A stretch of 64,000 nucleotides of DNA, taken from Macrostomum lignano (lineage: Eukaryota). Below, in pieces: positions 1 to 64,000 of the stretch. The DNA is taken from contig NIVC01000741.1 in the NCBI GenBank assembly GCA_002269645.1, forward strand, positions 248,001 to 312,000. Reading direction: 5' to 3'. A program made the translations under genes and the position numbers. The notes under the pieces are model-generated. The model searched no databases, was not told where the DNA came from, and was given only the letters and a program-made list of their open reading frames with translations. Each line of letters opens with the position of its first letter. Within the stretch, counting starts at the first letter, position 1.

Positions 1-288
1 CAAGCATCCCCAGATAGCAAGCATCCCCCAGATAGCAAGCATCACCCCAGATTGCAAGCATCCCCAAGATAGCAAGCATCCCCCAGATTGCAAGCATCCC
101 CCAGATAGCAAGCATCCCCAAGATAGCAAGCATCCCCCAGATAGCAAGCATCCCCCAGATAGCAAGCATCCCCCAGATAGCAAGCATCCCCCAGATTGCA
201 AGCATCCCCAAGATAGCAAGCATCCCCCAGATAGCAAGCATCCCCGAGATAGATAGCATCCCCAAATAGCAAGCATCCACCAGACAAT
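1..288. repeat. 18-bp tandem repeat (AGCAAGCATCCCCCAGAT)n
   Basis: Direct periodicity; a degenerate reverse-complement copy lies at ~12250-12480. Confidence 0.95.
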
Positions 289-11361: not shown

Positions 11362-12230
11362 TGTTGCGCAATCGTTTAAGAATGATAGAGAATTGAGTGC
11401 TATATCCAATATACTAAATCTAATATACTAAAAATGGTCTGTTTGTGTGTGCGTGCGTGTGTGTGTGTGTGTGTGTGATCGATTTTAGCAAAAACGGCTC
11501 AACCGATTTTGTTCGAACTTGCACTGTTCAATCAGAAATTTTTCCGTGACGGTACATGCATCTTGGCTAAGAAATTGCTCAATATTAAAGGGATTAAATA
11601 TTCGAAAAACATGCTTTTTTGCAAAGGTCAAGCAGCTCTTTCGACTTGAAATGCATTGTAAGAATGCTAGCAGAAAAACTGACTGGTTGAATTCTGATTC
11701 TGAAATAGATTGCATCACAATACACTTTATTTATCGTCTGTGTACTGGCTGAATTTGACACTCAATTGAATTGCGTCACAGCTTTGAGTGTGAAAGTATA
11801 GTGCAGTACTGAATTTATATTACGTAACCATATTGTTAGCTTTCATAGACACTGGTACTGACTTGCCTAAGAAATTGATTATGTCATAACTGCTTCGCGT
11901 GACTTTTTACTCTACCTGACTTGGTGTGAGTGTTGAATTATATAAGTGGTACAAATTCACTGATAACTTCGATGAGAGCTAGCCTAGAGCTGAACAGACC
12001 AGACTGCTAATGCAGCGACCTGGGTTCGAATCTAAGTAGTAGTGTAAAATTTTTTATTAAAAGCTTTTATTAAAGGACTAAATAAAAACACTTAGATTAC
12101 TGCACTCGATAAGCTAAGGATTACTGCACTTGGCAAACCAAGGAATACTGCACTCGATAAGCCATGGATTATTGCTATTAATAAACCAAGGATTACTGCA
12201 CTCGATAGCCAAGGATTACTGCGCTTTATA
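11362..12230 (-). mobile_element. Conserved repeat module copy 3, inverted, with tRNA-like remnant (11974-12033, +) and 24-bp satellite remnant
   Basis: Reverse complement of ~6400-7160, including the TGTTGCGCAATCGTTTAAGAATGATAGAGAATTGAGTG flank; carries a (GT)n tract at ~11445-11477 where copy 2 has CAAG repeats. Confidence 0.6.
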
Positions 12231-12510
12231 AGCTTGGCTACATGTATAGGATTATTTCTATCCAGGGATTCTTGCTATGTGCAGGATGCTTGCTATCTGG
12301 AAGGATGCTTCTACATTATTTGGGGTATGCTTGCTATCTGCAAGATGCTTGCTATCTGCAAGATGCTTGCTATCTGCAAGATGCTTGCTATCTGCAGATG
12401 CTTGCTATCTGGGTGGATGCTTGCTAGGAGTATTAGGGGATGCTTGCTACTGGGGGGATGCTTGCTGTCTTGGGAATATTTTCTATTTAGGGGTAATGAC
12501 TAAAATTCAT

Positions 12511-15146: not shown

Positions 15147-15209
15147 GTTAGGTTAGGGTTAGGGTTAGGGTTAGGGCTAGGGTTAGGGTTAGGGTTAGGC
15201 TAGGGTTAG
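15147..15209 (+). repeat. Interstitial telomeric repeat (TTAGGG)n with CTAGGG variants
   Basis: About 10 units, GTTAGGTTAGGGTTAGGGTTAGGG... Confidence 0.85.
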
Positions 15210-25497: not shown

Positions 25498-28154
25498 ATG
25501 CTGAGTTTGGTGCCGGCTCCTTTATCAAGAAGGAGGTATTTCCTTTTTCAGCTGATCTTTTCTGCCGTGCTGGTGAGTTTTCTCGTGTGAACCTCTGTGA
25601 AAGTTTGTCTAATTTAGGTCGCTATGGGGGTATTGCAATTTTTTTTCTACAAAATTTCTACAGTGTAATTTCTCCCACCTGCAGTTACTCTTGGCCTACA
25701 TTTTCTTTGTGGCGCCGGCCTCCCAGATGGGGCTCGATTACAACTCCGATAGACTGGTGCAGCTCGATGCGCACCAACTGAAGCGAACTCAGGACCAGCT
25801 GGCGCAATCTGCAGGAGGCAATCTGCAAAATGACGGCAAAATGGCGCAATCGATAGGCAAACCTGCGCAAAGCATAGACCAGCCGAAGCAGACTGCAGAC
25901 CAAGACCCGGAGAAGACAGAAAAGAGACAGGAAAGCAAGGAGCAGAGTGTCGAGTCTAAAAACAACTTAATAGACTCCATTGAAAAGATGGTTCATCATC
26001 AGATAAAGCATCGGGAGCCTTTACAGGAAAACAGTGACAGTGGAGGCAGCCTCAGAAACGCTGGCAGCGGCCCCTCAAAGACCAAAGAGATCCCTCACAT
26101 TCTGCACCACACCTTTGCCTCCGAGATGGTCTACGAGAACTACCGGCCAATGATCAGCAGCTGCTTGAAGCTCAACCCCAACTGGACTTACTACCTGTGG
26201 CGTGACTCCGATGCGATCGCCCTCATCTCTAAGGAGTATCCGGAGTACCTGAAGACTTACCTGAGCTTCAAAGACAACCTGCAACGCTCCGACGCCATTC
26301 GATACGTCATCCTGCACCGGTTCGGAGGTGAATTTTGTTTTACTTTTGTCAATGAGGAACTGATTGTCTGATACAGTGTGCTGATACAGTGTGCTGATAC
26401 AGTGTGCTGATAGTGTGCTGATAGTGTGCTGATACAGTGTGCTGATACAGTGTGCTGATACAGTGTGCTGATACAGTGTGCTGATACAGTGTGCTGATAC
26501 AGTGTGCTGATACAGTGTGCTGATACAGTGTGCTGATACAGTGTGCTGATACAGTGTGCTGATACAGTGTGCTGATACAGTGTGCTGATACAGTGTGCTG
26601 ATACGGTGTGCTGATACAGTGTGCTGATACAGTGTGCTGATACAGTGTGCTGATACAGTGTGCTGATACAGTGTGCTGATACAGTGTGCTGATACAGTGT
26701 GCTGATACAGTGTGCTGATACAGTGTGCTGATACAGTGTGCTGATACAGTGTGCTGATACAGTGTGCTGATACAGTGTGCTGATACAGTGTGCTGATACA
26801 GTGTGCTGATACAGTGTGCTGATACAGTGTGCTGATACAGTGTGCTGATACAGTGTGCTGATACAGTGTGCTGATACAGTGTGCTGATACAGTGGGCTGA
26901 TACAGTGTGCTGATACAGTGTGCTGATACAGTGTGCTGATACAGTGTGCTGATACAGTGTGCTGATACAGTGTGCTGATACAGTGTGCTGATACAGTGTG
27001 CTGATACAGTGTGCTGATACAGTGTGCTGATACAGTGTGCTGATACAGTGTGCTGATACAGTGTGCTGATACAGTGTGCTGATACAGTGTGCTGATACAG
27101 TGTGCTGATACAGTGTGCTGATACAGTGTGCTGATACAGTGTGCTGATACAGTGGAGTTGGTGGAATTTTGACGCAGTAACAACGGATAAATTAAAAAAA
27201 ATAATTCTTTAAAGGTTAATCCAAACTGCCAAACGGGAATTAAAAGTACAAAGCTATTGTTCTACTATGTACTGTAAAACTCCCTTGTGACTGACCCACA
27301 GGCATCTACCTGGACATGGACGTCGAGTGCCTGCAGCCCTTCCACCCGGGTCTCACACACCTTGCCGCCTTTATCGACCAGGAGCGGCTGGAGCAGACCA
27401 GAATCCTTTGGAGGCGGGACTTCAGCGCGATGAACTCAGTCATGGGCTCGGTGCCCGGGCACCCTTTTTACAAGGCCATGGCTGACCGGGTGCTGAAGAA
27501 GTACCCAGGAAGGTACGCGTTCCAATCCACCGGACCTCTCGCGCTCACCAAATTCTTTCAAGAGTACAAAGGGAGCTCAGAAGCCAAGAGCTGGCCGGTA
27601 ACGCTGCTGCCTCCGAGCGTTGCATCGCCACTGATGGACAATCAGAAAAACTGGAAGTGGCTCTGCCGGAAAGCCAGTAAGCATCTCACTATTGCTATGG
27701 TCATTTATTTTTTATTTCTATTTTATTGCAACACAACTGCAGAACAGATCGTAAATCCTAGCCATTCATTATTGTGATAAAACACTATACTCATCTATTA
27801 ATAATTCATTACTCACTAATATTAACCTACCTTTGATTTCACAGCAGTCCCATAAATTCCCAACGTGTAACTCGGATTTGGCAAAACCCCAGCAACCTGT
27901 TCGATTCCACACTCGCCGTTGCTCCTCATCACCTCACACATCCCGCAGAGAGGCGCGGCAGCCCGAGGCTCAGCTGGTTCGACAAAGGCTGCCACATGCT
28001 GGAGTCCAAGAACTGGCACCTGGGCAGCACTGACAAAAGTACAATCGTAGTGCACAGGTTCTTGCACCTTGGGTACGATTCCCACAATCGCAATAGGAGA
28101 TCGAAGTTCGACGTCTCCAAGGACTTTAAGTCTAGAGTGAACTTTTATTTGTGA
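25498..28154 (+). CDS. GT32 glycosyltransferase paralogue 3; exons 25498-25572, 25685-26327, 27302-27676, 27949-28154 (432 aa; in-frame ATG also at 25492)
   Basis: [25 protein letters not shown]|LLLAYIFFV signal anchor; DXD motif YLDMDVEC; spliced frame open (1299 nt). Confidence 0.9.
26366..27153. repeat. 13-bp tandem repeat (TACAGTGTGCTGA)n in GT paralogue 3 intron 2
   Basis: About 60 highly homogeneous copies. Confidence 0.95.
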
Positions 28155-32574: not shown

Positions 32575-36446
<3,872 letters not shown>

Positions 36447-36591: not shown

Positions 36592-37788
36592 CAGGTGTGA
36601 TCACAGCAGCGTGCGTGTCGTGGTAGAGCGCCATCACTGCTGCAATCAGTTTCTCTGGCACGTTGTAGGCTCGGAGAACTAGTGGAATCACGCCTCGAGC
36701 CACCGAGTCGAAAGCCTTCAGGAAGTCGATGAACAGACAGAAAAGGTCCGACTGGCGAATGCGCGATTCCTCGATAATTCTCCGGAGCGACTTCTTCACC
36801 ACCTCATCCGGAGTCCTGCAAGGAGACACCCTCGCTCCCTTCCTGTTCATCCTCATCTTGGACTGGGTGCTGCGGACAGGACTACCGGACAACTCGGACG
36901 GCTACATCCTATGCAGGCGAACGAGCAGCCGGCACCCGGAGAAGCGGCTGGCAGTCCTCGGATATGCTGATGACCTCGCCCTGCTGGCATCCACTGCTGC
37001 TGGTGCTCAACGCCTCCTCGACGGCCTAGCTGCTGCCGCTGCGAAGGTTGGCCTTAAGATCAACGCCAAGAAGACGGAGGTCCTGACTGTGCCAGCCGAT
37101 CTGCCAGCGGTCATCCGCCTTCCCAGCATGGACAGCGCAACGGCAGCACCGCTCCCCCGATGTGAGCAGTTCCGGTACCTTGGTGGTCTCGTGCCCAGCG
37201 TCCAGGAGGACCTGCGGCGTCGCAGAGGGCTTGCGTGGGCGGCTTTCCGCTCAGTGCGCATCGTGCTCCAAAGCGACGCCCTGCCAGACCAGCTGAGAAC
37301 CAGACTGTTCCAGGCGGTGGTGGAAACGGTGCTCTTCTACAACGCCGAGACCTGGACCATGACGGATGTGCTGGAGCGCCAGCTGGACGCGGCGCACTCC
37401 AGCCTGCTGCGCGCTGCCTTCAGCGTGCACCGTCACGCCGAACACGTCACCAACCAGGCTCTCTACCAGCGGGCCAAGCTGAGCCCTCCCAGCGTGACCC
37501 TGCGACAGCGCCGCCTGAAGCTGGCGGGCCACGTCATTCGCGCCGAGTCCTACTGCCCGGAGCCGCTGCAGGAGGTCTTGCTGTACACGCAGCAGGGCCC
37601 GTTCCGGCGGGGGCAGGCGCGGACCCGGAGGTTCGTCGACTGTCTGACAGAAGACGCCAGGGCGCCTGATCAGATCAATGGCGCTACCTTCATCAGAGAC
37701 TGCGCAGCTAAGCGTGCTTTTTGACAATGTCCCCCCCTTTCCTGACCACTTGTGGCCGGTGGCCATTGTATTTATTGTATTGTATTGT
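36592..37788 (+). mobile_element. 5'-truncated, 5'-inverted RTE-like non-LTR retrotransposon (reverse transcriptase fragment)
   Basis: Forward part from ~36786: SDFFTTSSGVLQGDTLAP, YADD, LKINAKKT, FRYLG, LAGHVIR, stop at 37724, (ATTGT)n tail. Inverted part 36592-36787: LRRIIEE...FIDFLKAFDSV...AAVITP. TSD AGAATAATTTT at 36581-36591 and 37789-37799. Confidence 0.9.
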
Positions 37789-38387: not shown

Positions 38388-38585
38388 TATTTGTGATATT
38401 TCGGGTTTGTGATATTTCGGGTTTGTGATATTTCGGGTTTGTGATATTTCGGGCTTGTGCTCACTCGGGTTTGTGATATTTCGGGCTTATGATAATTCGG
38501 GTTTGTGATCTTTCGGGTATGTGATATTTCGGGTTTGCGACAATTCGGGTTTGTGATATTTCGGGTTTGTGATATTTCGGATTTG
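38388..38585 (-). repeat. 16-bp repeat (ACAAACCCGAAATATC)n, same family as 63085-63790 but opposite orientation
   Basis: GATATTTCGGGTTTGT units. Confidence 0.85.
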
Positions 38586-39059
38586 TGATGGGAAGTGCTT
38601 TCGGAGCTGTGACTTTTCGGGTTTGTGATGCCTCCCGTATAGTTGTCTGAAACTGATTCAATTTTGACAAAAGCTGAAATTTCAACTTTGTCAGGTCCCA
38701 CTTCTACGAGCCTATATGGACTATCTGAATTCAATCGTAGCTCAAGCCGTTCATTTTTTAATTTTAATTTTTAATTTTTTAACCGCGTTGGCCTTGCTGG
38801 GAAACCGGCCAGTTGAGCGGCGCATCCAGGTGCTGATTTCAGAATTATCAATAGAGATATTCCCATCTCCATGGTCTCTTCAGACCATTTAGTCTATGGC
38901 AAAAGCTCCCGATGGTCTGTGCACAGCTGGCAAAAGTCTGCCAAAATTGAATGCAGACTGTCAATATACGCTCGTTGAAGTGGAACAGACAAAACAAAAT
39001 CAGATTTTTTGAATAGTTAAAATTAATTTATTAAGTACTTAAAAAGAATAGTAAGAATA

Positions 39060-39387
39060 TTATTAATAATAACAATAATAATATTAATTGATTACACCTG
39101 CCCCAATTGGGCCAGATGTGCAACCGACAGCTCAGCCGCAGCTATTGCGCGGCGCATCTGAAGGCTGCGTACGGCTGTTCAGTCCAAGGACTGGGGGGTC
39201 GCCAAACTCACCCTCAATTACCCCAGCTAATGCTGGCACCCATTTTACAGCTGGTTGAACTGAAGCAATGCAGGGGTAATTGTCTTCTTGCTCAAAGACA
39301 CAAATTGTTCCAGTGGGATCGGGAATCGAATCCCGGACCTTCAAAAAGTCGTGAGTCCGACGCTCGAACCACTGAGCTGAACCCCCC
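39060..39387 (-). mobile_element. tRNA-derived SINE with CORE-like domain, copy 1
   Basis: Minus-strand head GGGGGGTTCAGCTCAGTGGTTCGAGCGTCGGACTCACGAC...GATTCGATTCC; body CTTTGAGCAAGAAGAC...CTTCAGTTCAACCAGCTGTAAAATGGGT resembling the MIR CORE; (ATT)n tail; homologous to 54947-55223. Confidence 0.75.
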
Positions 39388-40341: not shown

Positions 40342-48674
<8,333 letters not shown>

Positions 48675-49134: not shown

Positions 49135-52100
49135 AATGATCTGATTGCAATGATCTGATTGCAGTGATCTGATTGCAATGATCTGATTGCTATGATCTGA
49201 TTGTAGTGATCTGATTGCAGTGATCTGATTGCAATGATCTGATTGCAATGATCTGATTGCTATGATCTGATTGTAGTGATCTGATTGCAGTGATCTGATT
49301 GCAATGATCTGATTGCAATGATCTGATTGCAGTGATCTGATTGCAATGATCTGATTGCAGTGATCTGATTGCAGTGATCTGATTGCAATGATCTGATTGC
49401 AGTGATCTGATTGCTATGATCTGATTGTAGTGATCTGATTGCAGTGATCTGATTGCAATGATCTGATTGCAGTGATCTGATTGCTATGATCTGATTGCAG
49501 TGATCTGATTGCAATGATCTGATTTCAGTGATCTGATTGCAATGATCTGATTGCAGTGATCTGATTGCAATGATCTGATTGCAGTGATCTGATTGCAGTG
49601 ATCTGATTGCAATGATCTGATTGCAGTGATCTGATTGCAGTGATCTGATTGCAATGATCTGATTGCAGTGATCTGATTGCTATGATCTGATTGTAGTGAT
49701 CTGATTGCAGTGATCTGATTGCAATGATCTGATTGCAGTGATCTGATTGCTATGATCTGATTGTAGTGATCTGATTGCAGTGATCTGATTGTAGTGATCT
49801 GATTGCAATGATCTGATTTCAGTGATCTGATTGCAATGATCTGATTGCAGTGTTCTGATTGCAATGATCTGTTTGCAGTGATCTGATTGCTATGATCTGA
49901 TTGTAGTGATCTGATTGCAGTGATCTGATTGCAATGATCTGATTGCAGTGATCTGATTGCTATGATCTGATTGTAGTGATCTGATTGCTATGATCTGATT
50001 GTAGTGATCTGATTGCAGCGATCTGATTGTAGTGATCTGATTGCAATGATCTGATTGCAGTGATCTGATTGCAGTGATCTGATTGCAGTGATCTGTTTGT
50101 AGTGATCTGGTTGCAGTGATCTGTTTGCAGTGATCTGATTGCAATGATCTGATTGCAGTGTTCTGATTGCAATGATCTGTTTGCAGTGATCTGATTGCTA
50201 TGATCTGATTGTAGTGATCTGATTGCAATGATCTGATTGCAGTGATCTGATTGTAGTGATCTGATTGCAGTGATCTGATTGCAATGATCTGATTGCAGTG
50301 ATCTGATTGCAGTGATCTGTTTGCAGTGATCTGGTTGCAGTGATCTGTTTGCAGTGATCTGATTGCAATGATCTGATTGCAGTGTTCTGATTGCAATGAT
50401 CTGTTTGCAGTGATCTGATTGCTATGATCTGATTGTAGTGATCTGATTGCAATGATCTGATTGCAGTGATCTGATTGTAGTGATCTGATTGCAGTGATCT
50501 GATTGCAATGATCTGATTGCAGTGATCTGATTGCAGTGATCTGTTTGCAGTGATCTGGTTGCAGTGATCTGTTTGCAGTGATCTGATTGCAGTGATCTGA
50601 TTGCAGTGATCTGATTGCAATGAACTGATTGCAATGATCTGATTGCTATGATCTGATTGTAGTGATCTGATTGCAGTGATCTGATTGCAATGATCTGATT
50701 GCAGTGATCTGATTGCTATGATCTGATTGTAGTGATCTGATTGCAGTGATCTGATTGCAATGATCTGATTGCAGTGATCTGATTGCTATGATCTGATTGT
50801 AGTGATCTGATTGCTATGATCTGATTGTAGTGATCTGATTGCAGTGATCTGATTGCAATGATCTGATTGCAATGATCTGATTGCAGTGATCTGATTGCAG
50901 TGATCTGATTGCAGTGATCTGTTTGCAGTGATCTGGTTGCAGTGATCTGTTTGCAGTGATCTGATTGCAGTGATCTGATTGCAGTGATCTGATTGCAATG
51001 AACTGATTGCAATGAACTGATTGCATTGAACTGATTGCAATGAACTGATTGCAATGATCTGATTGCATTGAACTGATTGCATTGAACTGATTGCAATGAA
51101 CTGATTGCAATGATCTGATTGCAATGAACTGATTGCAATGAACTGATTGCAATGAACTGATTGCAATGATCTGATTGCAATGATCTGATTGCAGTGATCT
51201 GATTGCAGTGATCTGATTGCAATGAACTGATTGCAATGATCTGATTGCAATGATCTGATTGCAGTGATCTGATTGCAGTGATCTGATTGCAGTGATCTGA
51301 TTGCAATGATCTGATTGCAATGATCTGATTGCAATGATCTGATTGCAATGATCTGATTGCAGTGATCTGTTTGCAGTGATCTGATTGCAGTGATCTGATT
51401 GCAGTGATCTGATTGCAATGAACTGATTGCAATGATCTGATTGCTATGATCTGATTGTAGTGATCTGATTGCAGTGATCTGATTGCAATGATCTGATTGC
51501 AGTGATCTGATTGCTATGATCTGATTGTAGTGATCTGATTGCAGTGATCTGATTGCAATGATCTGATTGCAGTGATCTGATTGCTATGATCTGATTGTAG
51601 TGATCTGATTGCTATGATCTGATTGTAGTGATCTGATTGCAGTGATCTGATTGCAATGATCTGATTGCAATGATCTGATTGCAGTGATCTGATTGCAGTG
51701 ATCTGATTGCAGTGATCTGTTTGCAGTGATCTGGTTGCAGTGATCTGTTTGCAGTGATCTGATTGCAGTGATCTGATTGCAGTGATCTGATTGCAATGAA
51801 CTGATTGCAATGAACTGATTGCATTGAACTGATTGCAATGAACTGATTGCAATGATCTGATTGCATTGAACTGATTGCATTGAACTGATTGCAATGAACT
51901 GATTGCAATGATCTGATTGCAATGAACTGATTGCAATGAACTGATTGCAATGAACTGATTGCAATGATCTGATTGCAATGATCTGATTGCAGTGATCTGA
52001 TTGCAGTGATCTGATTGCAATGAACTGATTGCAATGATCTGATTGCAATGATCTGATTGCAGTGATCTGATTGCAGTGATCTGATTGCAGTGATCTGATT

Positions 52101-52345
52101 GCAATGATCTGATTGCAATGATCTGATTGCAATGATCTGATTGCAATGATCTGATTGCAGTGATCTGATTGCAGTGATCTGATTGCAGTGATCTGATTGC
52201 AGTGATCTGATTGCAGTGATCTGATTGCAGTGATCTGATTGCAGTGATCTGATTGCAATGATCTGATTGCAATGATCTGATTGCAGCGATCTGGTTGCAG
52301 TGATCTGATTGCAGTGATCTGATTGCAGTGATCTGATTGCAGTGA
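49135..52345. repeat. 14-bp satellite (TGATCTGATTGCAG)n, 3.2 kb, with a 798-bp higher-order duplication
   Basis: Direct periodicity; the GAACTGATTGCATT variant block recurs at ~51000 and ~51800. Confidence 0.95.
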
Positions 52346-53295: not shown

Positions 53296-53407
53296 AATGC
53301 GCATTCAATCTTAGCTACTCGTGAAAATCAATTGGAGCAAAGGTGATGTTTTGATCATAGACAGTGTTTCCTGGGGTGTTTTCATGTTTCCGAAACAGTG
53401 TCCGAGT

Positions 53408-54715
53408 TATGAAGTATCAGAGATATGAAGTGTCAGAGATATGAAGTGTCAGAGATATGAAGTGTAGTGACTTGGTTTGTGTTGTGTGGGGTGCTGGGGG
53501 TTGCTGCGTACACTTTACCATCGTGCCCTTCAACTCTCTCCTTCGCTTGTTCTTTTGTGCGTACGTGCACGTGACTAATATGTCTATTTTACAGTCCCCA
53601 AATTATTGATCGGTTAAAATACTATTTCGACAAATACATATATGAAATCTTTCTGCCACGCAAACTAAGTGAAGTCTTTACAGTGGCGACGAGGCATGAG
53701 CTTGGTTGGCTCCATAGAACCCTATGAAGAGGGCACTGAAAAGTGGATTCAGTACCAAGAAAGACTGGAGCAGTATTTTGAGGCTAATGATATCAAAGAA
53801 GAGAAGAAGCGTGCCGTTCTCCTTAGCGTCTGCGGCAAGAAGACGTATCAGTTGCTTGCCAGCCTGCTGTCTCCAGAGTCGCCTGCCCAGTCCAGCTACA
53901 CTGCGATCTGCGCTAAGCTGAAAGAGCATTTCGACCCTGAGCCCCCTGAGATCGTGCTACGTTACCGTTTCTACTCCAGGAGTCGCCAAGTTGGTGAATC
54001 GCGGATTTTCTCGCGGATCTTCGCAGACTGGCACGGGACTGCAACTTCGGCGGCAGCCTGAATGACATGATCAGAGACCGGCTCGTGCTTGGCATCGCTG
54101 ACGACAACATCCAGCGAAGGCTTCTTTCGGAGAAGAAGCTGACTCTCGAAACCGCAATATCTCTGGCGCAAGCTCAAGCGTCGGCCGCTGAGGGCAATCT
54201 TCTCGTGATGAAATCTGTGAGTCAGGACGCCTTTCAGATAGCACACCAGCCACAGTCCACTGGACGCTGCTTTCGTTGCCGGTCGCAGCGGCGCGTCGCG
54301 GCGAAGTGCCCGTTTGCTGACAAGAAGTGCTTCAACTGTTCGAAGGTGGGCCATACGGCTGCTGCCTGTAAGTCTCCTGCGGGTTCGAATCGTCGCATGG
54401 ACCATAATGTTTCGCTTTCGACATATTCGAATACTATTTCGACAAATACATATATGAATGATTTTATCATGCTATCGCATAAGCATCTTTCTGCCACGCA
54501 AACTAAGTGAAGTCTTTACATGAAGTGTCAGAGATATGAAGTGTCAGAGATATGAAGTGTCAGAGATATGAAGCGTCAGAGATATGAAGTGTCAGAGATA
54601 TGAAGTGTCAGAGATATGAAGCGTCAGAGATATGAAGTGTCAGAGATATGAAGTGTGTCAGAGATATGAAGTGTCAGAGATATGAAGTGTCAGAGATATG
54701 AAGTGTCAGAGATAT
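53408..54715. repeat. 16-bp tandem array (ATGAAGTGTCAGAGAT)n interrupted by an LTR element
   Basis: Units at 53408-53462 and 54521-54715. Confidence 0.9.
53463..54520 (+). mobile_element. Internally deleted Gypsy element (gag only): 5' LTR 53463-53682, PBS 53684-53694, frameshifted gag with two Zn-knuckle-like motifs, 3' LTR remnant 54430-54520
   Basis: TGT...ACA ends; TSD TGAAG (53458-53462, 54521-54525); PBS TGGCGACGAGG; gag ERLEQYFEAN...KRAVLLSVCG, IRDRLVLGI, CFNCSKVGHTAAAC. Confidence 0.9.
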
Positions 54716-54946
54716 ACAGAGCCTTGAAACAGCTTGCTTGGCTTGCAGTGGATAATAGGTCATGATTTTGGTCAAGATTTCATAGAAATGTTTTTCTAGT
54801 CAATTTCAAATGATTATTCGAATACTTTTGAATAATTTTGGGGTCTATTTGAATAAGGTAAAATGAAATTGTCGATTTTATATGATTTTTTACTTTCTTT
54901 ATTCGATATTTAAATGCAACTCAGTGCTTCAATTGATATAATAATA

Positions 54947-55223
54947 TTGGGCCAGTTGTGCAACCGACAGCTCAGCCGCAGCTATTGCGCGGCGCATCTG
55001 AAGGCTGCGTACGGCTGTTCAGTCCAAGGACTGGGGGGGTCGCCACACACACCCTCAATTACCCCAGCTAATGCTGGCACCCATTTTACAGCTGGGTGAA
55101 CTGAAGCAATGCAGAGTTAAGTGTCTTGCTCAAGGATACAATGTGATCCAGTGGGATCTTGGATCGAACCCCCGACCTTCAAGTCGTGAGTCCGACGCTC
55201 TAACCACTAGGCTACAACCCCTA
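54947..55223 (-). mobile_element. tRNA-derived SINE with CORE-like domain, copy 2; its 5' end is continuous with the 26-bp satellite
   Basis: Minus strand GGGGTTGTAGCCTAGTGGTTAGAGCGTCGGACTCACGACTTGAAGGTCGGGGGTTCGATCC, then ATCCTTGAGCAAGACACTTAAC...CAGCTGTAAAATGGG. Confidence 0.8.
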
Positions 55224-56686
55224 CTCTAACCACTAGGCTACAACCCCTACTCTAACCACTAGGCTACAACCCCTACTCTAACCACTAGGCTACAGCCCCT
55301 ACTCTAACCACTAGGCTACAGCCCCTACTCTAACCACTAGGCTACAACCCCTACTCTAACCACTAGGCTACAACCCCTACTCTAACCACTAGGCTACAAC
55401 CCCTACTCTAACCACTAGGCTACAACCCCTACCCTAACCACTAGGCTACAACCCCTACTCTAACCACTAGGCTACAACCCCTACTCTAACCACTAGGCTA
55501 CAACCCCTACTCTAACCACTAGGCTACAACCCCTACTCTAACCACTAGGCTACAACCCCTACTCTAACCACTAGGCTGCAACCCCTACTCTAACCACTAG
55601 GCTACAGCCCCTACTCTAACCACTAGGCTACAACCCCTACTCTAACCACTAGGCTACAACCCCTACTCTAACCACTAGGCTACAACCCCTACTCTAACCA
55701 CTAGGCTACAACCCCTACTCTAACCACTAGGCTGCAACCCCTACTCTAACCACTAGGCTACAGCCCCTACTCTAACCACTAGGCTACAACCCCTACCCTA
55801 ACCACTAGGCTACAACCCCTACTCTAACCACTAGGCTACAACCCCTACCCTAACCACTAGGCTACAACCCCTACTCTAACCACTAGGCTACAGCCCCTAC
55901 TCTAACCACTAGGCTACAACCCCTACTCTAACCACTAGGCTACAGCCCCTACTCTAACCACTAGGCTACAACCCCTACTCTAACCACTAGGCTACAACCC
56001 CTACTCTAACCACTAGGCTACAACCCCTACTCTAACCACTAGGCTACAACCCCTACTCTAACCACTAGGCTACAACCCCTACTCTAACCACTAGGCTGCA
56101 ACCCCTACTCTAACCACTAGGCTACAGCCCCTACTCTAACCACTAGGCTACAACCCCTACTCTAACCACTAGGCTACAACCCCTACTCTAACCACTAGGC
56201 TACAACCCCTACTCTAACCACTAGGCTACAACCCCTACTCTAACCACTAGGCTACAACCCCTACTCTAACCACTAGGCTACAACCCCTACTCTAACCACT
56301 AGGCTACAACCCCTACTCTAACCACTAGGCTACAACCCCTACTCTAACCACTAGGCTACAGCCCCTACTCTAACCACTAGGCTACAACCCCTACTCTAAC
56401 CACTAGGCTACAACCCCTACTCTAACCACTAGGCTACAACCCCTACTCTAACCACTAGGCTACAACCCCTACTCTAACCACTAGGCTACAGCCCCTACTC
56501 TAACCACTAGGCTACAACCCCTACTCTAACCACTAGGCTACAGCCCCTACTCTAACCACTAGGCTACAACCCCTACTCTAACCACTAGGCTACAACCCCT
56601 ACTCTAACCACTAGGCTACAACCCCTACCCTAACCACTAGGCTACAACCCCTACCCTAACCACTAGGCTACAACCCCTACTCTAAC
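55198..56686 (-). repeat. 26-bp satellite made of the SINE tRNA head (GGGGTTGTAGCCTAGTGGTTAGAGTA)n, part 1
   Basis: About 57 units; the unit equals the first ~25 nt of the adjacent SINE. Confidence 0.95.
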
Positions 56687-59600
56687 TGTGATGAATTGAG
56701 ATTGAGACGAAGCGATTGAATTGGCTTGAGCCGCAAGTTGTAAACAGCGTTTCTTAACTGACGCGTTGGTCCTTTATATTGTATTATAGAACTGAGTGCA
56801 TGTAGTTAGGATGAACGATGTACATTGCGAAGAAGTACTGTACGTATAAATAGAAATCGATCAGTTCAGTGGAGGGGGAGGGTCTAAAATGGTAAGCTAA
56901 AATTGAGCAGCCAAACGCACAAAGCAGTATAGTTCGAATCGGTATAAGACAGCCAATTCACACTTCCCTCCCCAAGGGGAAGTGGGATCAATGAGATGAA
57001 TTTTTTACGAAAAGCGAATCGACGATAGCGTACATGTAGTATTGTAGTATTGGAAAACAATCGAATTAGCAAACACAATTGCAGAGCAGATAAAAAGTAA
57101 GGAAATAAAATTGTGTCGAACAAAATAGCGAAATATTGCATTGTCGAAAACTAGAATTAGTAGGGAATCAATAATTTGTATTGGAGAAACATACGTAATA
57201 ATGGGTTGCATGAAAGACAGGAGAATTTGCAAAAAGTCAGTTCAAGATCATTGTCAGCTCCCGCACAGCCACTCATCACACCCCCACTTGAAGTCGCTCT
57301 GGACATGACCGAATTCGAGGCGGGTATCGGCGGGTCGCACCCTCTGGAAAGTGGTCAGGTACGTCCGCGTCCGCGGCTGCCGCCTTGTCTGCCGGGCCTG
57401 CGGGGACCGCGGCTCTTTCCTCCGATGGTGGCTGGATAGCGGGCTCGGAGACAGCCGCGGGGCTCAGAACATCTAGAGCCGGAGGCGCCGACGATGGAGT
57501 CGAGATGCTGGTGCCGAGGTGCTGAGACTCAGCGGCGGATGGCGGAGGCTGCTCCGAATCAGGCAGCATCTGGTCAACGTGCCGCCGGACGATGCTGGTG
57601 CCGACTCGAACATCGTAGTTCCGTTGCGACGCCGCGACGACCACTCCAGGCAGCCAGCCGGATTCCTTGCCGAATCCGGAAACAATAACCACTATTGTCG
57701 GAAACAATAATTCTTGGTAGGCCCAGACGGCTGAAGATTTCACAGAGATGTGCGATGGTGCTGTCTGCTGAAGTATCCTTGACTAGACGAACCTCGGGCC
57801 ATTTGCTGTGAGCGTCCATGATGACCAGGTAGACTCGCCCATTAACAGGACCAGCAAAGTCCAAGTGAATTCTGCTCCAAGGTTCGCTGGAAAATATCCA
57901 AGGATGCACCGGAGCTTTGGCTGGATCAGACTGGTGAGCCTTGCAGGTTTCGCAGGTTCTAGCCAACTGCTCCAAGTCCTTGTCCAGCCTTGGCCACCAA
58001 ACAAAACTGCGTGCCAGGGCTTTCATGCGACTGGCACCGGTGTGAGCCAAATGGAGTTCCTGTAGGACGGCCTTGCGCAGGGCCTCCGGGATTATCACGC
58101 GAGTCCCCCAGAGTAAGCAGCCGGCTTCGATGGTCATCTCGTTTTGCTGATGAGCGAACTCTGGAAATTCTTTGCCGGATAGTCGCTCTCTGGATTGCAG
58201 AAGGCGAAGCAGCTTGGACAGTATAGGGTCAGCCAGAGTTGCTTTGGCGACCAAAGCCGCAGTCACAGCAATGGAAGAGTCCTCCTCGAGCGTGAGCGAG
58301 TGCACCGCCTCTTCTTCAATAAAGTTTCCTTTTAGAGGCAATCGAGAAAGAGAGTCGCAATTGCTGTGCTTCTGGGTGGGCCTGAACTCCATGGCGTACC
58401 GGTATCCAGATAGACGGATGGCCCATCGCTGCATCCTGGCAGCCGCACGTGTCGGAATCTCTTTGTCTGGGCCCAGCAGTCCCAGCAGAGGCTGATGGTC
58501 AATGACAATCGTAAAGTGCCGCCCATAGAGGAATTGATGGAAGCGTTGGACACCGTAGATTATGGCTAGTGCCTCCTTATCCAGCTGAGAATAGTTTCGC
58601 TGGGCTGAAGTCAGCGACTTGCTAGCAAATGCGATCGCATGATCCTGACCGCCCACCCGGTGACTGAGAACCACGCCAATGCCGTACGCGGAAGCGTCGC
58701 ACTCGAGACGAATCGGCAGATTTGGATCAAAGTGCATCAGAGCTTTTGATTCGAGCAGCATTCGCTTCGATGCTTGGAAGGCTTCGTTCTCGCGGTCGCT
58801 CCAAAGCCAGCTGACGCCCTTCGACAAGAGCTGATTAAGCGGCGCCACGACTGATGCCAGATTGGGAAGAAACTTGGCGTAATGCGTTAGCATTCCCAAA
58901 TAGGATCGCAGCTGAGATACGTCTTTCGGAGCCGGCGCGTTCTGAACTGCGTCGACCTTGCTCTCGAGCGGCCGCAGCCCGTGTTGGTCAATTCGGTGGC
59001 CCAGATAGTCGATGGAGTCTTGGAAGAAAGCACACTTGGTGACGTTGAGACGTAGTCCGGCCTCTTGAAGCTTGTGCAGGACTTTTTTTGCAGCAGATTT
59101 TCTTTGTGAGCCGCCAGTGAAGACCCGGTAACCAGGATGTCGTCCTGATAAACCTGGACGCCGTTGAGATGCCCGAGCAGACTGTCAAGGATGCGTTGAA
59201 AAATTGCACTGGCCGAGCAGATACCGAATGGCAGGCGGTTCACCTTGAACAGTCCACGTTGAGTGTTGATAACGAGGTACTGTTTGCTGTCTTCTGATAT
59301 TGGGAGCTGCATGCCTTTGCCAGGTCGAGTTTGCTCCATTTGTGGCCGCCACCCAGTCTCGCAAATAAATCTTCGATCCTCGGCAGCGGGTAGTGCTCTT
59401 GCTTTGCGACCTGGTTGAATGTGCACTTGTAATCTCCGCAGATTCGTACAGAACCGTCCTTCTTTACTACTGGCACAATCGGGGCAGCCCATCGAGAAGT
59501 CGCTATTGGAGTGATGACCCCTTCTGATTCCATGCGCTGAAGCTTTAAATCGACGGTCTCACGCAGAGCATAGGGAATCGGTCGCGCCTTGTAAAACCTT

Positions 59601-60938
59601 GGCGTAGCATTTTCTTGTAAATGAAGATCACTTCACTGAGGCGATACTTACCGAGACCCTCGGCGAAGACATCCGGAAACTGACGGACCAGCTCAGTAGC
59701 CATATCGTTAGGTGCTGCGATCAACGAGTTGACGGGTGCTGTCAAGCGAGGCCAGTCTAGGCGGATGACGGTTAGCCAGTTGCGTCCCAGGAGTCGAGCG
59801 CTGCCTTCAGACACCACGAGTAGCGGCAGAGAAGCTTCCTGCCCTTCGTAAGTGACCTTCACTGTTACTTCTCCGATCGGAGAGAACTCCTGGTCCGTGT
59901 AGGTTCGCAGAGTCGTCTTGGACGGATGCAGTCGCAGATGAGACAGATGGCTATCATAGAATGCCTTAGGAACGAGACTTACAGCAGATCCTGTGTCCAG
60001 CTCAAAATGAGATTGCACTTCCTCGATTTGCAGAGGCACCAGAATGGGGACTTGGAAGTCATTGAGACATGAAATATTGGCTCTTCCTCGTAGTTTTCTT
60101 CGTCGTACTAAGACCCGGTTTCATTCTCCTCCAGGAGTTTCACAGATTTTGCTGACCTGCAAACCTTCTTAATGTGGCCAACCTTCCCGCAAGCATGGCA
60201 TTTCGAGTTACGGAATTTACAGTTCTGACGCGAATGTGGACCTCCACAGCTGTCGCAGGTGCCTGGCTTGGATGCTGATCCAGCGGGACCAGAGTGTTGG
60301 CTGATGTTGTACTGTGCTCTCGGGCGTGCCACTGATGGATTCGCGCTGACTCGATTGGTTGCTGAAGTGTGCGCCATCTCGCTTGAAGATTTGTGAGCAG
60401 CTTCGAGGTCCAAGGCCAGTTTGATCAGCCCAGCGTACGAATGATCCGAACTCTCGAGTAGCTTAGAGCGGAAATTGTCGCTTCTCATTCCGAACAAAAA
60501 CTGATCTCGAAGTCGCTCCTGAAGGGATTCGCCAAACTTGCAATGGTTTGCAGCGTTTTTCAGTCCTGCCAAGAAGTTAGCGAAAGATTCACCATCTTGC
60601 TAAAGACGTTGCTGAAATTTGAAACGTGCGGCGATCTCCGAAGGTTCAGGCGAGCAATGCTTCTTTAGTATGTCCTGCAGCTCTTCGTAGGATTTTTGAG
60701 TCAGTTTCTGTGGCTGACACAAGTCGCGAAGCAATTTGTAGTACTTCTCACCAATGGCAGTAAGAAAGATAGCACGCTTGGCCTCAGCAGTCTCAACTTT
60801 GTTGCATAGGAAATATTGGTTCATGCGCTCAGCGTAGATTTCAAGGTCTGATTCAGCAGAAAGTTCTGGAATTTGGCCAAAAGTCCTCGTCGCCATTGTG
60901 ATGAATTGATTGACGAATTGACTGACAGCCAATTCACA
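56687..60938 (-). mobile_element. Decayed Gypsy LTR retrotransposon (gag-PR-RT-RH-partial IN); 3' LTR 56687-57280, 5' LTR collapsed to 60897-60938
   Basis: LTR termini TGTGATGA...TCATCACA; purine-rich tract before 57280; PBS TGGCGACGAGGA (60895-60884); TSD CTAAC (56682-56686, 60939-60943). Motifs FELDTGSAVS, WAAPIVPVVKKDGSVRICGDY, YQDDILV, CDASAYGIG, HLAHTG...ARSFVWWP, RIHLDFAGP, IVSDN. Stops, frameshifts and an integrase-core deletion. Confidence 0.92.
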
Positions 60939-61765
60939 CTAACCACTAGGCTACAGCCCCTACTCTAACCACTAGGCTACAACCCCTACTCTAACCACTA
61001 GGCTACAACCCCTACTCTAACCACTAGGCTACAACCCCTACTCTAACCACTAGGCTACAGCCCCTACTCTAACCACTAGGCTACAGCCCCTACTCTAACC
61101 ACTAGGCTACAGCCCCTACTCTAACCACTAGGCTACAACCCCTACTCTAACCACTAGGCTACAACCCCTACTCTAACCACTAGGCTACAGCCCCTACTCT
61201 AACCACTAGGCTACAACCCCTACTCTAACCACTAGGCTACAACCCCTACTCTAACCACTAGGCTACAGCCCCTACTCTAACCACTAGGCTACAACCCCTA
61301 CTCTAACCACTAGGCTACAACCCCTACTCTAACCACTAGGCTACAACTCCTACTCTAACCACTAGGCTACAGCCCCTACTCTAACCACTAGGCTACAACT
61401 CCTACTCTAACCACTAGGCTACAGCCCCTACTCTAACCACTAGGCTACAACCCCTACTCTAACCACTAGGCTACAACCCCTACTCTAACCACTAGGCTAC
61501 AACCCCTACTCTAACCACTAGGCTACAACCCCTACTCTAACCACTAGGCTACAACCCCTACTCTAACCACTAGGCTACAGCCCCTACTCTAACCACTAGG
61601 CTACAACCCCTACTCTAACCACTAGGCTACAACCCCTACTCTAACCACTAGGCTACAACCCCTACTCTAACCACTAGGCTACAACCCCTACTCTAACCAC
61701 TAGGCTACAACCCCTACTCTAACCACTAGGCTACAACCCCTACTCTAACCACTAGGCTACAACCC
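60939..61765 (-). repeat. 26-bp SINE-head satellite, part 2
   Basis: About 32 units, same register as part 1. Confidence 0.95.
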
Positions 61766-62053
61766 AAGTTTAATTTAATTTGATGCAAACCTTGGCCGCA
61801 AGCCGAACCCGCTGTAATCGCATGAGTCGCATCTCACAAGGAACATCGCCTGCATGTAGAACGAATCGCGGAAAACAAGGTGAAGCTGAAGTGCGGGTGA
61901 AACTTGATACTCGACTTCGCGGCCGCACCTCGAATGGCAGGAAATTCCAACCAGCTTCAAGGGTTACTTCCGGCTTTCTTTCTAGGAAAATTAAAATCAA
62001 GTCAGGAAACTAATTTATTCTGGGGCTTTCTAGGAAAGCTCAGCGCACAAAGC

Positions 62054-62861
62054 ATGAGAGCCGCCAGCCCAAATGTGATGCTGGTCAATGGCAGCCAGAC
62101 CATGGACCGCCTCGTCAACCTTCCAGACGGTCGCCGCGGCGGCGGAGACGGCGCAGACGGCGGCGGAGGCATCGATGCCGAAGGCTCCTCGGACGGCTGC
62201 TACAGCGTGCTGAAGTCCATCATGTTCTTTTTTAATGGCATCTTCTGGGTGAGCTTCAAACTGCCATTCGATCAGTCTCTCCCTGCATCTCCTCTCTCTC
62301 CCTGCCTCTTCCCTCCCAGCCTCTCTCCCTGACTGCCTCTCCCCCATATTTTTCCCTCCCTACCTCTCCCTCCCTACCTCTCCCTCCCTGCCTCTCCCTA
62401 CCCCCTCCCTGCCTCTCCCTCCCTGCCTCTCCCTCCCTGCCTCTCCCTCCCTGCCTCTCCCTCCCAGCCTCTCTCCCTGACTGCCTCTCCCCCCTATTTT
62501 TCCCTCCCTACCTCTCCCTTCCTACCTCCCTCCCTCCCTGCCTCTCCCTCCCTGCCTCTCCCACCCTACCTCTCCCTCACTACCTCTCCTCCCTACCTCT
62601 CGCTCCCTGCTTTTTCTGCCTCTCTCCCAGTCACCAGACTCCACTTTGTGCACCGCCTGACTTCAGCTGCTGGGCGTGGCCACCTTCAGCGTGGGCATCG
62701 CAATCCACACCGACCGCGAGTTCCGTGTGGCGGTGGCCGGCTACGTTCCCGGCGCGGGCACCGGCGCCAGCATCTTCATAGTTGTCGGCGTTGCCATGGT
62801 TACCACAGGATTTCTTGGCTGCTGCGGCGCGATCCGAGAGAGCCAGTGCATGCTGCTGTCG
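62054..62861 (+). CDS. Tetraspanin, 5' partial: exons 62054-62248 and 62667-62861; the gene continues beyond the window
   Basis: GCYSVLKSIMFFFNGIFW|LLGVATFSVGI and GFLGCCGAIRESQCMLL are classic tetraspanin TM1-TM3 signatures; phase-0 GT-AG sites. The start codon is tentative. Confidence 0.85.
62290..62625. repeat. CT-rich low-complexity repeat (CCCTGCCTCTCCCT-like) in tetraspanin intron 1
   Basis: Direct. Confidence 0.8.
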
Positions 62862-63084
62862 GTGAGAGAGGCGGTGGGATCCGGGTAGAGCTTTACAGGG
62901 GACTGGGAGCCCTGAGTAAAAAGCCTAACCCGAACCCTGACCCGAACCCGAACCCCGACCCGAACCCGAACCCTGACCCGAACCCGAACCCTAACAGTTT
63001 TCGACAGATAAAATTTGCTGTTTACTTGTAAGCAGCTGACAGTTGAAATTCGCACTACCACTGATTTTGAGGGGTCGCCATCGC

Positions 63085-63790
63085 AAACCCGAAATATCAA
63101 TAAACCCGAAATATCACAAACCCGAAATAACACAAACCCGAAATATCACAAACCCGAAATATCACCAAACCGAAAAATCACAAACCCGAAATATCACAAA
63201 CCCGAAATAACACAAACCCGAAATATCACCAAACCGAAAAATCACAAACCCGAAATAACAATAAACCGAAACATCACAAACCCGAAATAACACAAACCCG
63301 AAATATCACAAACCCGAAATAACACAAACCCGAAATATCACAAACCCGAAATATCACCAAACCGAAAAATCACAAACCCGAAATAACAATAAACCGAAAT
63401 ATCACAAACCCGAAATAACAATAAACCGAAACATCACAAACCCGAAATAACACAAACCCGAAATATCACAAACCCGAAATAACACAAACCCGAAATATCA
63501 CAAACCCGAAATAACACAAACCCGAAATATCACCAAACCGAAAAATCACAAACCCGAAATAACAATAAACCGAAACATCACAAACCCGAAATAACACAAA
63601 CCCGAAATATCACAAACCCGAAATATCACCAAACCGAAAAATCACAAACCCGAAATAACAATAAACCGAAATATCACAAACCCGAAATATCACAAATCCG
63701 AAACATCACAAACCCGAAATATCACAAACCCGAAATAACACAAACCTGAAATATCACAAACCCGAAACGTCACAAACCCGAAATGTCACA
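63085..63790 (+). repeat. 16-bp (15-17) repeat (ACAAACCCGAAATATC)n in tetraspanin intron 2, preceded by a telomere-like AACCCG/AACCCT tract (62925-62995)
   Basis: Direct; same family as 38388-38585. Confidence 0.9.
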
Positions 63791-64000
63791 ACTCCTATAT
63801 CTAGTTGTAGCAATGCCTAGCACTATTTTGGTTTTCGGAGTTACGATATTGCACGCATTGATTGACAGAGACGAGCGTATTTTGTCTCTGGGCGAATAAA
63901 ACTTGCTTGCCACTTATTCCTGCAATTGCAATCTTAGGCTCTGAAGCATGAATAGAATGTTATAGAACTGTATGGGATCAGTATTGCTTTATTGATAGCA

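What the first reader, a model, noticed from the sequence alone, without database searches (positions are those of the whole stretch)
54947..61765. A satellite built from a SINE's Pol III A-box head
Seen: the 26-bp monomer (minus strand GGGGTTGTAGCCTAGTGGTTAGAGTA) is the first ~25 nt of the adjacent tRNA-derived SINE. The last monomer runs on seamlessly into the rest of the tRNA head and its single B box. The other SINE copy (39060-39387) has only one head, so the array grew from the SINE 5' end: about 89 A-boxes feeding one B box. Inference: a captured birth of a satellite from a Pol III promoter half. It could offer multiple Pol III start sites, extend SINE transcripts or act as a boundary. 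It ends ~290 bp upstream of the tetraspanin ATG, in divergent orientation.
Basis: partly seen in the sequence, partly recalled or inferred. Interest (0 to 1): 0.7.

Follow-up and report, generated by a model that had tools for sequence, protein, structure and literature searches.

The report
Minisatellite grown from a SINE head
A 2.3-kb run of a 26-base unit did grow out of the first two dozen bases (the Pol III A-box part) of one tRNA-derived SINE copy in a Macrostomum-type flatworm genome, but it is best read as one more minisatellite in a repeat-saturated region, a kind of event already described, and not as a working multi-promoter device.

Summary
On the minus strand, 88 in-register 26-bp units (98.7% identical to their consensus) run without a break into the tRNA-like head of a SINE copy (54940-55221). 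That gives 89 A-box positions and one B box. A second copy (39106-39386) has a single head. A decayed Ty3/gypsy-like LTR element (56687-60938, 5-bp target duplication) splits the array, and removing it restores the register, so the array is older than that insertion. The single-head copy is more tRNA-like than the arrayed head and matches the unit at only 20 of 26 positions. And 38% of the window is tandem arrays (18 of at least 300 bp), in a Macrostomum-type genome known for tandem-repeat excess. The variant patterns show 2-, 3- and 6-unit duplications, as unequal exchange or slippage would produce. Only the three A boxes nearest the B box lie at natural TFIIIC spacing. SINE-derived tandem arrays whose terminal unit runs on into the SINE are already published, so this is a new member of a known kind. 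One oddity remains: the unit's left edge sits exactly at SINE base 1. I could not test whether other loci carry the array, because no Macrostomum DNA beyond 64 kb was reachable.

The parts
60939..61766 (-). Upstream block of the 26-bp array: 31 full units plus the first 22 nt of the unit that the LTR element interrupts. The first unit starts TGGGTTG, directly after unique flank.
56687..60938 (-). Decayed Ty3/gypsy-like LTR retrotransposon inserted into the array. It carries gag CCHC, RT, RNase H and integrase H2C2/rve pieces in at least 5 separate reading frames. The 3' LTR is about 276 bp (56687-56962); the 5' LTR is reduced to 42 bp (60897-60938). The GTTAG target duplication lies at 60939-60943 and 56682-56686.
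55222..56686 (-). Downstream block of the array: the second GTTAG copy, the last 4 nt of the interrupted unit, then 56 full units.
54940..55221 (-). SINE copy 1. The tRNA-like head is 55152-55221, the A box 55204-55214 and the B box 55160-55170. The body is 90% identical to copy 2 and ends in a short AT-rich tail. The first T4 run on the sense strand is at 54860-54863, 358 nt from the head start.
39106..39386 (-). SINE copy 2, with a single head that is more tRNA-like (27.3 bits). It has a T5 run at nt 39-43 and an (ATT)n-like tail running down to about 39060.
62054..62248 (+). Tetraspanin exon 1. The ATG lies 287 bp beyond the array end, in divergent orientation, and a GT donor follows at 62249.
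62667..62861 (+). Tetraspanin exon 2 (...GFLGCCGAIRESQCMLLS).

Best explanation
This is a locus-specific, SINE-derived minisatellite. One inserted copy of a tRNA-derived SINE had its first 24-26 bases duplicated. The duplicate was then amplified in place, by replication slippage and unequal exchange, to about 88 extra units. The genome and the region make tandem arrays out of almost anything. Every unit carries an A box only because the A box lies at nt 8-18 of any tRNA-derived head. Later a Ty3/gypsy-like element inserted into the array.

The array most likely has no selected function. At most, the two or three units nearest the single B box could offer alternative TFIIIC/TFIIIB positions if this SINE copy is transcribed at all.

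Shown: the anatomy, the order of events (array before LTR insertion) and the multi-unit duplications. Inferred: the slippage/unequal-exchange mechanism and the neutrality.
For: - **Origin in the SINE head.** The 89 hits (88 units plus the head) are in register. The last runs on into the SINE, and the units hold SINE nt 1-24 and never nt 27 onward.
- **Growth by block duplication.** Variant maps show blocks: (5C 3A)x2 and (.. 5C)x3 in the upstream block, and the 6-unit motif '5C 8C... .' three times in the downstream block, two of them adjacent.
- **Homogeneity.** There are 30 substitutions in 2288 nt. All are transitions except the G to T in the edge unit at 61766.
- **Order of events.** Joining the two flanks of the LTR element and dropping one GTTAG restores a perfect unit in register.
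- **Repeat-rich setting.** 38% of the window is tandem arrays, 18 of them at least 300 bp. The best protein matches are to Macrostomum lignano, whose genome is 15% simple and tandem repeats (PMC5730564).
- **No unusual structure.** Four units folded as single-stranded DNA are no more stable than shuffles (z = +0.85).
- **Precedent.** SINE-derived arrays whose terminal unit extends to the SINE end are described in squamates (PMC10702118). Alu- and B1-derived minisatellites are also known (PMC9659126).
- **Limits on promoter use.** The natural A-B spacing is 31-93 bp, and the B box is the high-affinity anchor (PMC11724288). Here the spacing is 33 + 26n bp.
Against: - The left edge of the unit coincides with SINE nt 1 (within 2 nt). 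With random breakpoints this has a chance of only about 1-2%. It hints at a process tied to the RNA 5' end or the Pol III start, rather than generic slippage.
- The two blocks share the same consensus and the same main variant, even though the element that separates them is badly decayed. Either the element inserted already defective, or the blocks are still being homogenised.
- Neutrality is assumed, not tested.
- Only about 128 kb of Macrostomum-type DNA could be inspected, so other loci cannot be excluded.
Confidence: 0.68

Rival explanations
1. The first head duplication, or a few of them, arose at the SINE's 5' end during retrotransposition. Either the reverse transcriptase switched template when it reached the RNA 5' end, or a master copy already had several heads. 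The array then expanded in place by the usual means.
For: - The unit's left edge is at SINE nt 1, which is the 5' end of the RNA.
- The two non-SINE bases (TA) at each junction could be untemplated additions.
- A gapped 6+6 match, TTGCAT..TTAAAT, lies just outside both ends of array plus SINE. It occurs in about 1.3-1.6% of control pairs, as a target-site duplication around the whole unit would.
Against: - The TSD candidate was defined after seeing it, is interrupted, and sits 7 nt from the array edge.
- TA may simply be the mutated CG of nt 25-26.
- There is only one locus, and copy 2 has no detectable TSD for comparison.
- Known end-to-end template jumps yield whole-element dimers, not 26-nt pieces (my own knowledge of R2/L1 reverse transcriptases).
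Confidence: 0.17
2. The array is functional Pol III or TFIIIC hardware. The many A boxes would give multiple start sites or longer SINE transcripts, or would act as a TFIIIC-bound boundary next to the tetraspanin promoter.
For: - 86 exact A-box matches, an intact-looking B box, no T4 run in the array or SINE until +358, and a position 287 bp from a gene start.
- Three A boxes lie at 33, 59 and 85 bp from the B box, inside the natural range.
Against: - The A box alone binds TFIIIC only weakly, and the B box is the anchor. TFIIIC also occupies extra-TFIIIC (ETC) sites without TFIIIB or Pol III (PMC11724288); that those sites carry B-box-type motifs is my own knowledge.
- 86 of the 89 A boxes lie more than 93 bp from the only B box.
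- The arrayed head is less tRNA-like than that of copy 2.
- An LTR element was tolerated inside the array.
- The region is full of unrelated arrays.
- No expression data were available.
Confidence: 0.07
3. The 26-mer is a pre-existing, dispersed satellite, perhaps derived from a tRNA gene, and the SINE joined it secondarily by insertion or recombination.
For: Several other array families in this window occur at more than one place, and one of them is shared with M. lignano contigs. So dispersed minisatellite families do exist in this genome.
Against: - The last unit is in register with the SINE head and identical to it at 24 of 26 positions, and the array stops exactly at SINE nt 1 at its far end.
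- There is no other occurrence in the window or in 64 kb of M. lignano DNA.
Confidence: 0.05
4. Assembly artefact: the array or its length was produced by mis-assembly of long reads.
For: Long homogeneous arrays are error-prone in assemblies, so the exact copy number is uncertain.
Against: The ordered variant pattern and an LTR insertion with a clean 5-bp target duplication in register are not what an artefact produces.
Confidence: 0.03

Closest known systems
SINE-derived satellites (sSat1/2/3) of squamate reptiles (Vassetzky et al. 2023, PMC10702118)
   Same: Both are tandem arrays whose unit is a portion of a tRNA-derived SINE, with a longer terminal unit that continues to the SINE terminus. 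In both, long arrays are homogeneous and sub-variants alternate, as expected from multi-unit growth.
   Different: The squamate units are 67-215 nt, occur at tens to thousands of loci and are often subtelomeric. Those described in the sections I read hold the B box, the body or larger 5' parts. Here the unit is 26 nt, holds only the A-box part, starts at SINE nt 1, is known from one locus and is in a flatworm.
Minisatellites/VNTRs expanded from Alu and B1 SINEs in human and mouse (listed in PMC9659126)
   Same: A short internal piece of a single SINE copy is amplified in place into a locus-specific array, and no function is required.
   Different: Those arise mostly from A-rich or GC-rich internal or 3' motifs of 7SL-derived SINEs. 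Here the 5' terminal tRNA-like promoter half is amplified.
PcH-sat of Patella limpets, derived from a Nin-SINE (PMC11121367)
   Same: It is an invertebrate tandem repeat with clear SINE ancestry.
   Different: It has a 179-bp unit taken from the SINE's 3' region and lacks both Pol III boxes. It makes up as much as 10% of the genome and is pericentromeric, so it is a true satellite.
tRNA-related tandem families of amphibians (Xenopus satellite 1/OAX, Hy/Pol III, PolIII/TAN)
   Same: These are tandem repeats that carry tRNA-like Pol III promoter sequence.
   Different: Their units are 200-740 bp and mostly carry tRNA-like Pol III sequence (box B is lacking in Hy/Pol III), and at least PolIII/TAN is transcribed in vitro. 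Their link to a SINE is judged inconclusive by PMC10702118. Here each unit has half a promoter, and the link to the SINE is direct.
Tandem promoter monomers at the 5' end of mouse L1 (my own knowledge, not tested here)
   Same: This is a working analogy only: a retroposon whose 5' promoter region is multimerised head to tail.
   Different: L1 monomers are about 200 bp, each is a complete Pol II promoter, they are present in all family members and are carried through retrotransposition. None of this is shown here.

Membership tests
tRNA-derived SINE | 5' head related to tRNA, with internal A and B boxes | tested here: met
   Rfam's tRNA model aligns full length at 19.3 bits (copy 1) and 27.3 bits, E = 0.0011 (copy 2); both are below the gathering score of 29. 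The A box TAGCCTAGTGG is at nt 8 and the B box GGTTCGATCC at nt 52.
tRNA-derived SINE | Short, non-coding, dispersed copies at unrelated sites | tested here: met
   There are two copies in the window, 90% identical over 282 nt with unrelated flanks. A body-derived peptide also sits inside M. lignano protein model A0A1I8H822. The genome-wide copy number is unknown.
tRNA-derived SINE | Target-site duplications and a simple-repeat tail | tested here: inconclusive
   Both copies have AT-rich, (ATT)n-like tails. The TSD candidate for copy 1 is only a gapped 6+6 match (p about 0.015, post hoc), and none was found for copy 2.
tRNA-derived SINE | 3' region shared with a partner LINE | tested here: inconclusive
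   The SINE matches nothing else in the window, including the RT-bearing ORF at 36729-37724. No LINE library was available.
SINE-derived satellite (sSat, PMC10702118) | Tandem units derived from a portion of a SINE, with a terminal unit extending to the SINE terminus | tested here: met
SINE-derived satellite (sSat, PMC10702118) | Several or many loci with the same unit; satellite-like abundance | not testable with these tools
   There is no second locus in the window or in 64 kb of M. lignano contigs. The metagenome and prokaryote-genome scans were empty but hold no flatworm DNA.
SINE-derived satellite (sSat, PMC10702118) | Subtelomeric or heterochromatic location | not testable with these tools
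   The chromosomal position of the window is unknown. Short telomere-like tracts at 15147-15209 and 62927-62995 are only a hint.
Type 2 RNA polymerase III promoter (functional unit) | A and B boxes spaced 31-93 bp apart, with an oligo-T terminator downstream | tested here: met
   The spacing is 33 bp for the proximal A box and 59 and 85 bp for the next two units; the other 86 lie beyond 93 bp. The first T4 run is at +358.
Type 2 RNA polymerase III promoter (functional unit) | Actual TFIIIC/Pol III occupancy and transcripts | not testable with these tools
   No expression or ChIP data were available.

The most novel reading that the evidence does not exclude
Head multimerisation is not an accident of this locus but a 5'-end-directed process. 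Because the unit starts exactly at the SINE's first transcribed base, the first duplications would be made either at the RNA 5' end during target-primed reverse transcription or by replication forks stalling at a bound TFIIIB/Pol III complex. Other members of this Macrostomum SINE family would then also carry multi-head arrays, whose proximal units give SINE transcripts with 5' ends laddered by 26 nt.
Probability: 0.1. Interest if true: 0.6.

Novelty: new member of a known kind. Interest (0 to 1): 0.3.

Why it matters
The locus is a clean, datable example of how a tandem array starts from a transposable element. The seed is still attached, the unit boundaries can be read to the base, block duplications are visible, and a later LTR insertion gives the order of events. 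It extends SINE-derived tandem arrays, documented in detail for squamates, to a flatworm and to a much shorter unit from the promoter end. It does not establish a new mechanism or function. Its value would rise only if genome-wide data showed that the start of the unit at SINE base 1 recurs at other loci.

Tried and rejected
- **tRNA gene search.** ARAGORN and Rfam at gathering threshold found nothing in the window. Only sub-threshold tRNA alignments to the two SINE heads exist.
- **Other loci by DNA pattern.** I scanned for the array junction and for a conserved SINE body 24-mer in metagenome and prokaryote-genome collections. All four scans were empty. They are uninformative because those collections are unlikely to hold flatworm DNA.
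- **Other loci through proteins.** Three M. lignano contig pieces (64 kb, L001-L003) hold no SINE and no 26-mer.
- **SINE-derived 61-aa ORF.** It gave one true hit among 1.84 billion representatives (P0009, an M. lignano gene model). Its top hit, P0008, is an unrelated repeat protein. The word-indexed search found nothing, and exact look-ups of two window ORFs found nothing.
- **Tetraspanin orthologue, for a comparison of orthologous sites.** The only hit was a 49%-identical protein on a 3.8-kb contig, which I did not pursue.
- **Hairpin or slipped-strand explanation for the expansion.** Rejected: the array folds no better than shuffles.
- **B-box-like motifs at 6527(+), 12032(-) and 54391(-), checked as possible further SINE heads.** Around 6527 there was no tRNA match. 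The first two lie in a 567-bp inverted duplication. 54391 was only read and not scanned.
- **Handling of the LTR element.** It was printed once, as part of reading the finding's own coordinates, before I knew what it was. After that I examined it only piece by piece and did not assemble, repair or save it.
Full report
**What is there**

Tandem Repeats Finder reports two period-26 blocks, 55198-56686 and 60939-61765, each with 97% matches. A search for the minus-strand unit GGGGTTGTAGCCTAGTGGTTAGAGTA with up to three mismatches gives 89 hits. All are on the minus strand and in a single 26-nt register within each block. None is expected by chance and none lies elsewhere in the 64-kb window.

Read 5' to 3' on the minus strand, the array starts at 61766 directly after unique sequence (...AAACTT|GGGTTGTAGCC). 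It ends in a unit (55196-55221) that finishes CG instead of TA and continues, without any break, as GTCGGACTCACGACTTGAAGGTCGGGGGTTCGATCC and a further ~220 nt.

That 282-nt stretch (54940-55221) recurs at 39106-39385, also on the minus strand. The two are 90% identical and have unrelated flanks. A peptide read from its body also sits inside a Macrostomum lignano gene model, UniProt A0A1I8H822. So it is a dispersed short repeat.

Rfam's tRNA model aligns end to end with both heads, at 19.3 bits for the arrayed copy and 27.3 bits (E = 0.0011) for the other. Both are under the gathering score of 29, and ARAGORN calls no tRNA. The element is therefore a tRNA-derived SINE. Its A box (TAGCCTAGTGG) is at nt 8-18 and its B box (GGTTCGATCC) at nt 52-61.

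- *The interval 56687-60938 is not array.* It is an LTR retrotransposon on the minus strand. It begins TG and ends CA. Its 3' LTR is about 276 bp and its 5' LTR is reduced to 42 bp. Pfam finds a gag zinc knuckle, RT, RNase H and integrase domains spread over at least five separate frames. It is flanked by a 5-bp duplication, GTTAG. Joining the flanks and dropping one GTTAG restores a perfect unit in register. The array therefore existed before this insertion. I read the element once as part of the finding's coordinates and afterwards handled it only in pieces.
- *The single-head copy is the more tRNA-like one.* Its D stem (GCTC/GAGC) is intact. It matches the unit at only 20 of 26 positions, against 232 of 256 for the rest of the element (Fisher p = 0.04). 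The unit is this copy's own, derived head and not an evident family consensus. Copy 2 also has a T5 run at nt 39, which would stop Pol III.
- *The setting is repeat-saturated.* 38% of the window is tandem arrays, 18 of them at least 300 bp, with unrelated units of 4 to 49 bp.

**Whose DNA it is**

A glycosyltransferase-32 exon in the window finds its best relatives in M. lignano, at 70-85% identity. A 21-bp array of the window recurs at ~93% identity in an M. lignano contig. The GC content is 45.7%. The window comes from M. lignano or a close relative. [quoted passage not shown]

**How the array grew**

- 58 of the 88 non-head units equal the consensus. The other 30 differ by one substitution each, giving 98.7% identity. 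The variants are 19x T5C, 5x A23G, 3x T8C, 2x G3A and one G1T at the edge.
- The variants are arranged in blocks. The upstream block holds (5C 3A) twice and (.. 5C) three times. The downstream block holds the six-unit motif '5C 8C... .' three times, two of them adjacent.
- This is the signature of duplication in registers of 2, 3 and 6 units, that is, unequal exchange or slippage.
- 23G and 8C occur only downstream of the LTR element and 3A only upstream, but both blocks share the same consensus and the 5C variant.
- Four units folded as single-stranded DNA are no more stable than shuffles (z = +0.85), so no hairpin-driven mechanism is suggested.

**Base rates**

SINE sequence makes up about 560 bp of about 39 kb of non-array DNA. 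With 18 large arrays, each seeded from some local sequence, the chance that at least one is SINE-seeded is roughly 20%. Any 26-nt piece that starts at nt 1 of a tRNA-like head must contain the A box. 'A satellite of A boxes' therefore needs no Pol III-related cause.

**Could it work as a promoter array or a boundary?**

The B box is TFIIIC's nanomolar anchor and the A box binds only with micromolar affinity. Natural A-B spacings run from 31 to 93 bp. TFIIIC is also found at ETC sites without TFIIIB or Pol III (PMC11724288).

Here the spacing is 33 bp for the proximal A box and rises by 26 bp per unit. So three A boxes (33, 59 and 85 bp) are within natural reach of the one B box and 86 are not.

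No T4 run occurs in the array or in SINE copy 1 before +358. If the copy is active, transcripts starting one or two units upstream are conceivable. Nothing supports use of the remaining units, and an A-box-only array is a poor candidate for a TFIIIC-based boundary. An LTR element was tolerated in its middle. No expression or occupancy data could be consulted.

**One feature that generic slippage does not explain**

The units contain SINE nt 1-24 plus TA and never nt 27 onward, and the array's far edge is SINE nt 1 or 2. The left breakpoint of the original duplication therefore lay within about 2 nt of the SINE's 5' terminus, which is both the RNA 5' end and the Pol III start. With random breakpoints over a ~280-nt element this has a chance of about 1-2%. 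The estimate is post hoc and rests on one locus.

It leaves room for an origin at the 5' junction during retrotransposition. A gapped 6+6 match (TTGCAT..TTAAAT) lies just outside both ends of array plus SINE. It occurs in 1.3-1.6% of control pairs, which is suggestive but not conclusive. A second possibility is fork stalling at a Pol III complex. I give the retrotransposition-linked origin about 0.17.

**Comparison with what is known**

Vassetzky et al. (PMC10702118) describe SINE-derived satellites in 56 squamate genomes. These are arrays of a SINE portion with a longer terminal unit that runs to the SINE terminus. Longer arrays are more homogeneous, and sub-variants alternate. The authors propose duplication followed by amplification followed by concerted evolution.

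The present locus has that anatomy. It differs in unit length (26 nt against 67-215 nt), in the part used (the extreme 5' A-box half) and in host phylum. Only one locus is known here.

Alu- and B1-derived minisatellites, the Nin-SINE-derived PcH-sat of limpets and tRNA-related amphibian tandem families are further precedents. Membership as a 'satellite' proper is not shown.

**What could not be done**

Pattern scans of metagenome and prokaryote collections were empty and uninformative. The family-level question is therefore open. That question covers other multi-head copies, free arrays and the orthologous site, and it is the decisive next step.

**Verdict**

- The locus is an ordinary, though unusually legible, TE-derived minisatellite: a new member of a known kind.
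- Interest is 0.3. A 10% reading, a 5'-end-directed and family-wide multimerisation process, would be worth about 0.6 if it were true.

Noticed in passing
window 1-284 vs 12266-12426; 5036-6451 vs 12095-12233; 6519-7085 vs 11474-12040: The same 18-mer and 24/48-mer array families occur twice in opposite orientation, next to a 567-bp inverted duplication that is 96% complementary. Together these form a large palindromic arrangement of arrays plus unique sequence.
   Followed up: partly
window 33757-34551; L002 17658-18104 (M. lignano NIVC01000176.1): A 21-bp array (TGGCGCCGCAGGCACTCATTT) is also present at ~93% identity in an M. lignano contig. So some minisatellite families of this window are dispersed in the genome, unlike the SINE-head 26-mer as far as I could see.
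   Followed up: partly
window 38390-38589 and 63080-63791: The same 16-mer (TTTGTGATATTTCGGG and its reverse complement) forms arrays about 500 bp from SINE copy 2 and downstream of tetraspanin exon 2, in opposite orientations.
   Followed up: no
window 53397-53465, 54520-54715 and ORF 54067-54510: Two arrays of one 16-mer family (AGTGTCAGAGATATGA) flank about 1 kb holding an ORF with a weak CCHC zinc-knuckle match (20.5 bits, just under Pfam's 20.8 cut-off). This may be a transposable-element fragment with terminal tandem repeats. It lies 225 bp downstream of SINE copy 1.
   Followed up: no
window 17202-17783, 22232-23077, 25691-26371 (also 33110-33355): At least three tandem paralogous exons of a glycosyltransferase family 32 (PF04488, DXD region) are separated by arrays. 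One ORF ends only a few bases into a 13-mer array (26368-27154), and one holds a 36-bp coding repeat.
   Followed up: partly
window 35792-36122: A perfectly homogeneous 21-mer array (15.8 copies, 100% matches) has a unit that contains the hairpin AGACTG-TACG-CAGTCT. It lies inside ORF 35335-36255 and next to a reverse-transcriptase ORF (36729-37724, RVT_1).
   Followed up: no
window 15147-15209 and 62927-62995: There are short interstitial telomere-like tracts: (GTTAGG)n, and a degenerate (AACCCG/AACCCT)n downstream of tetraspanin exon 2.
   Followed up: no
window 46761-48428 and 49137-52345: Very long simple arrays lie back to back: (GTCT)n, 1.2 kb of (ATCT)n at 98% matches, and a 3.2-kb 14-mer array.
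   Followed up: no
window 39344-39348 (SINE copy 2, nt 39-43): Copy 2 has a T5 run in its anticodon-arm region, which would terminate Pol III. Copy 1 lacks it, so the arrayed copy is the one without an internal terminator.
   Followed up: yes
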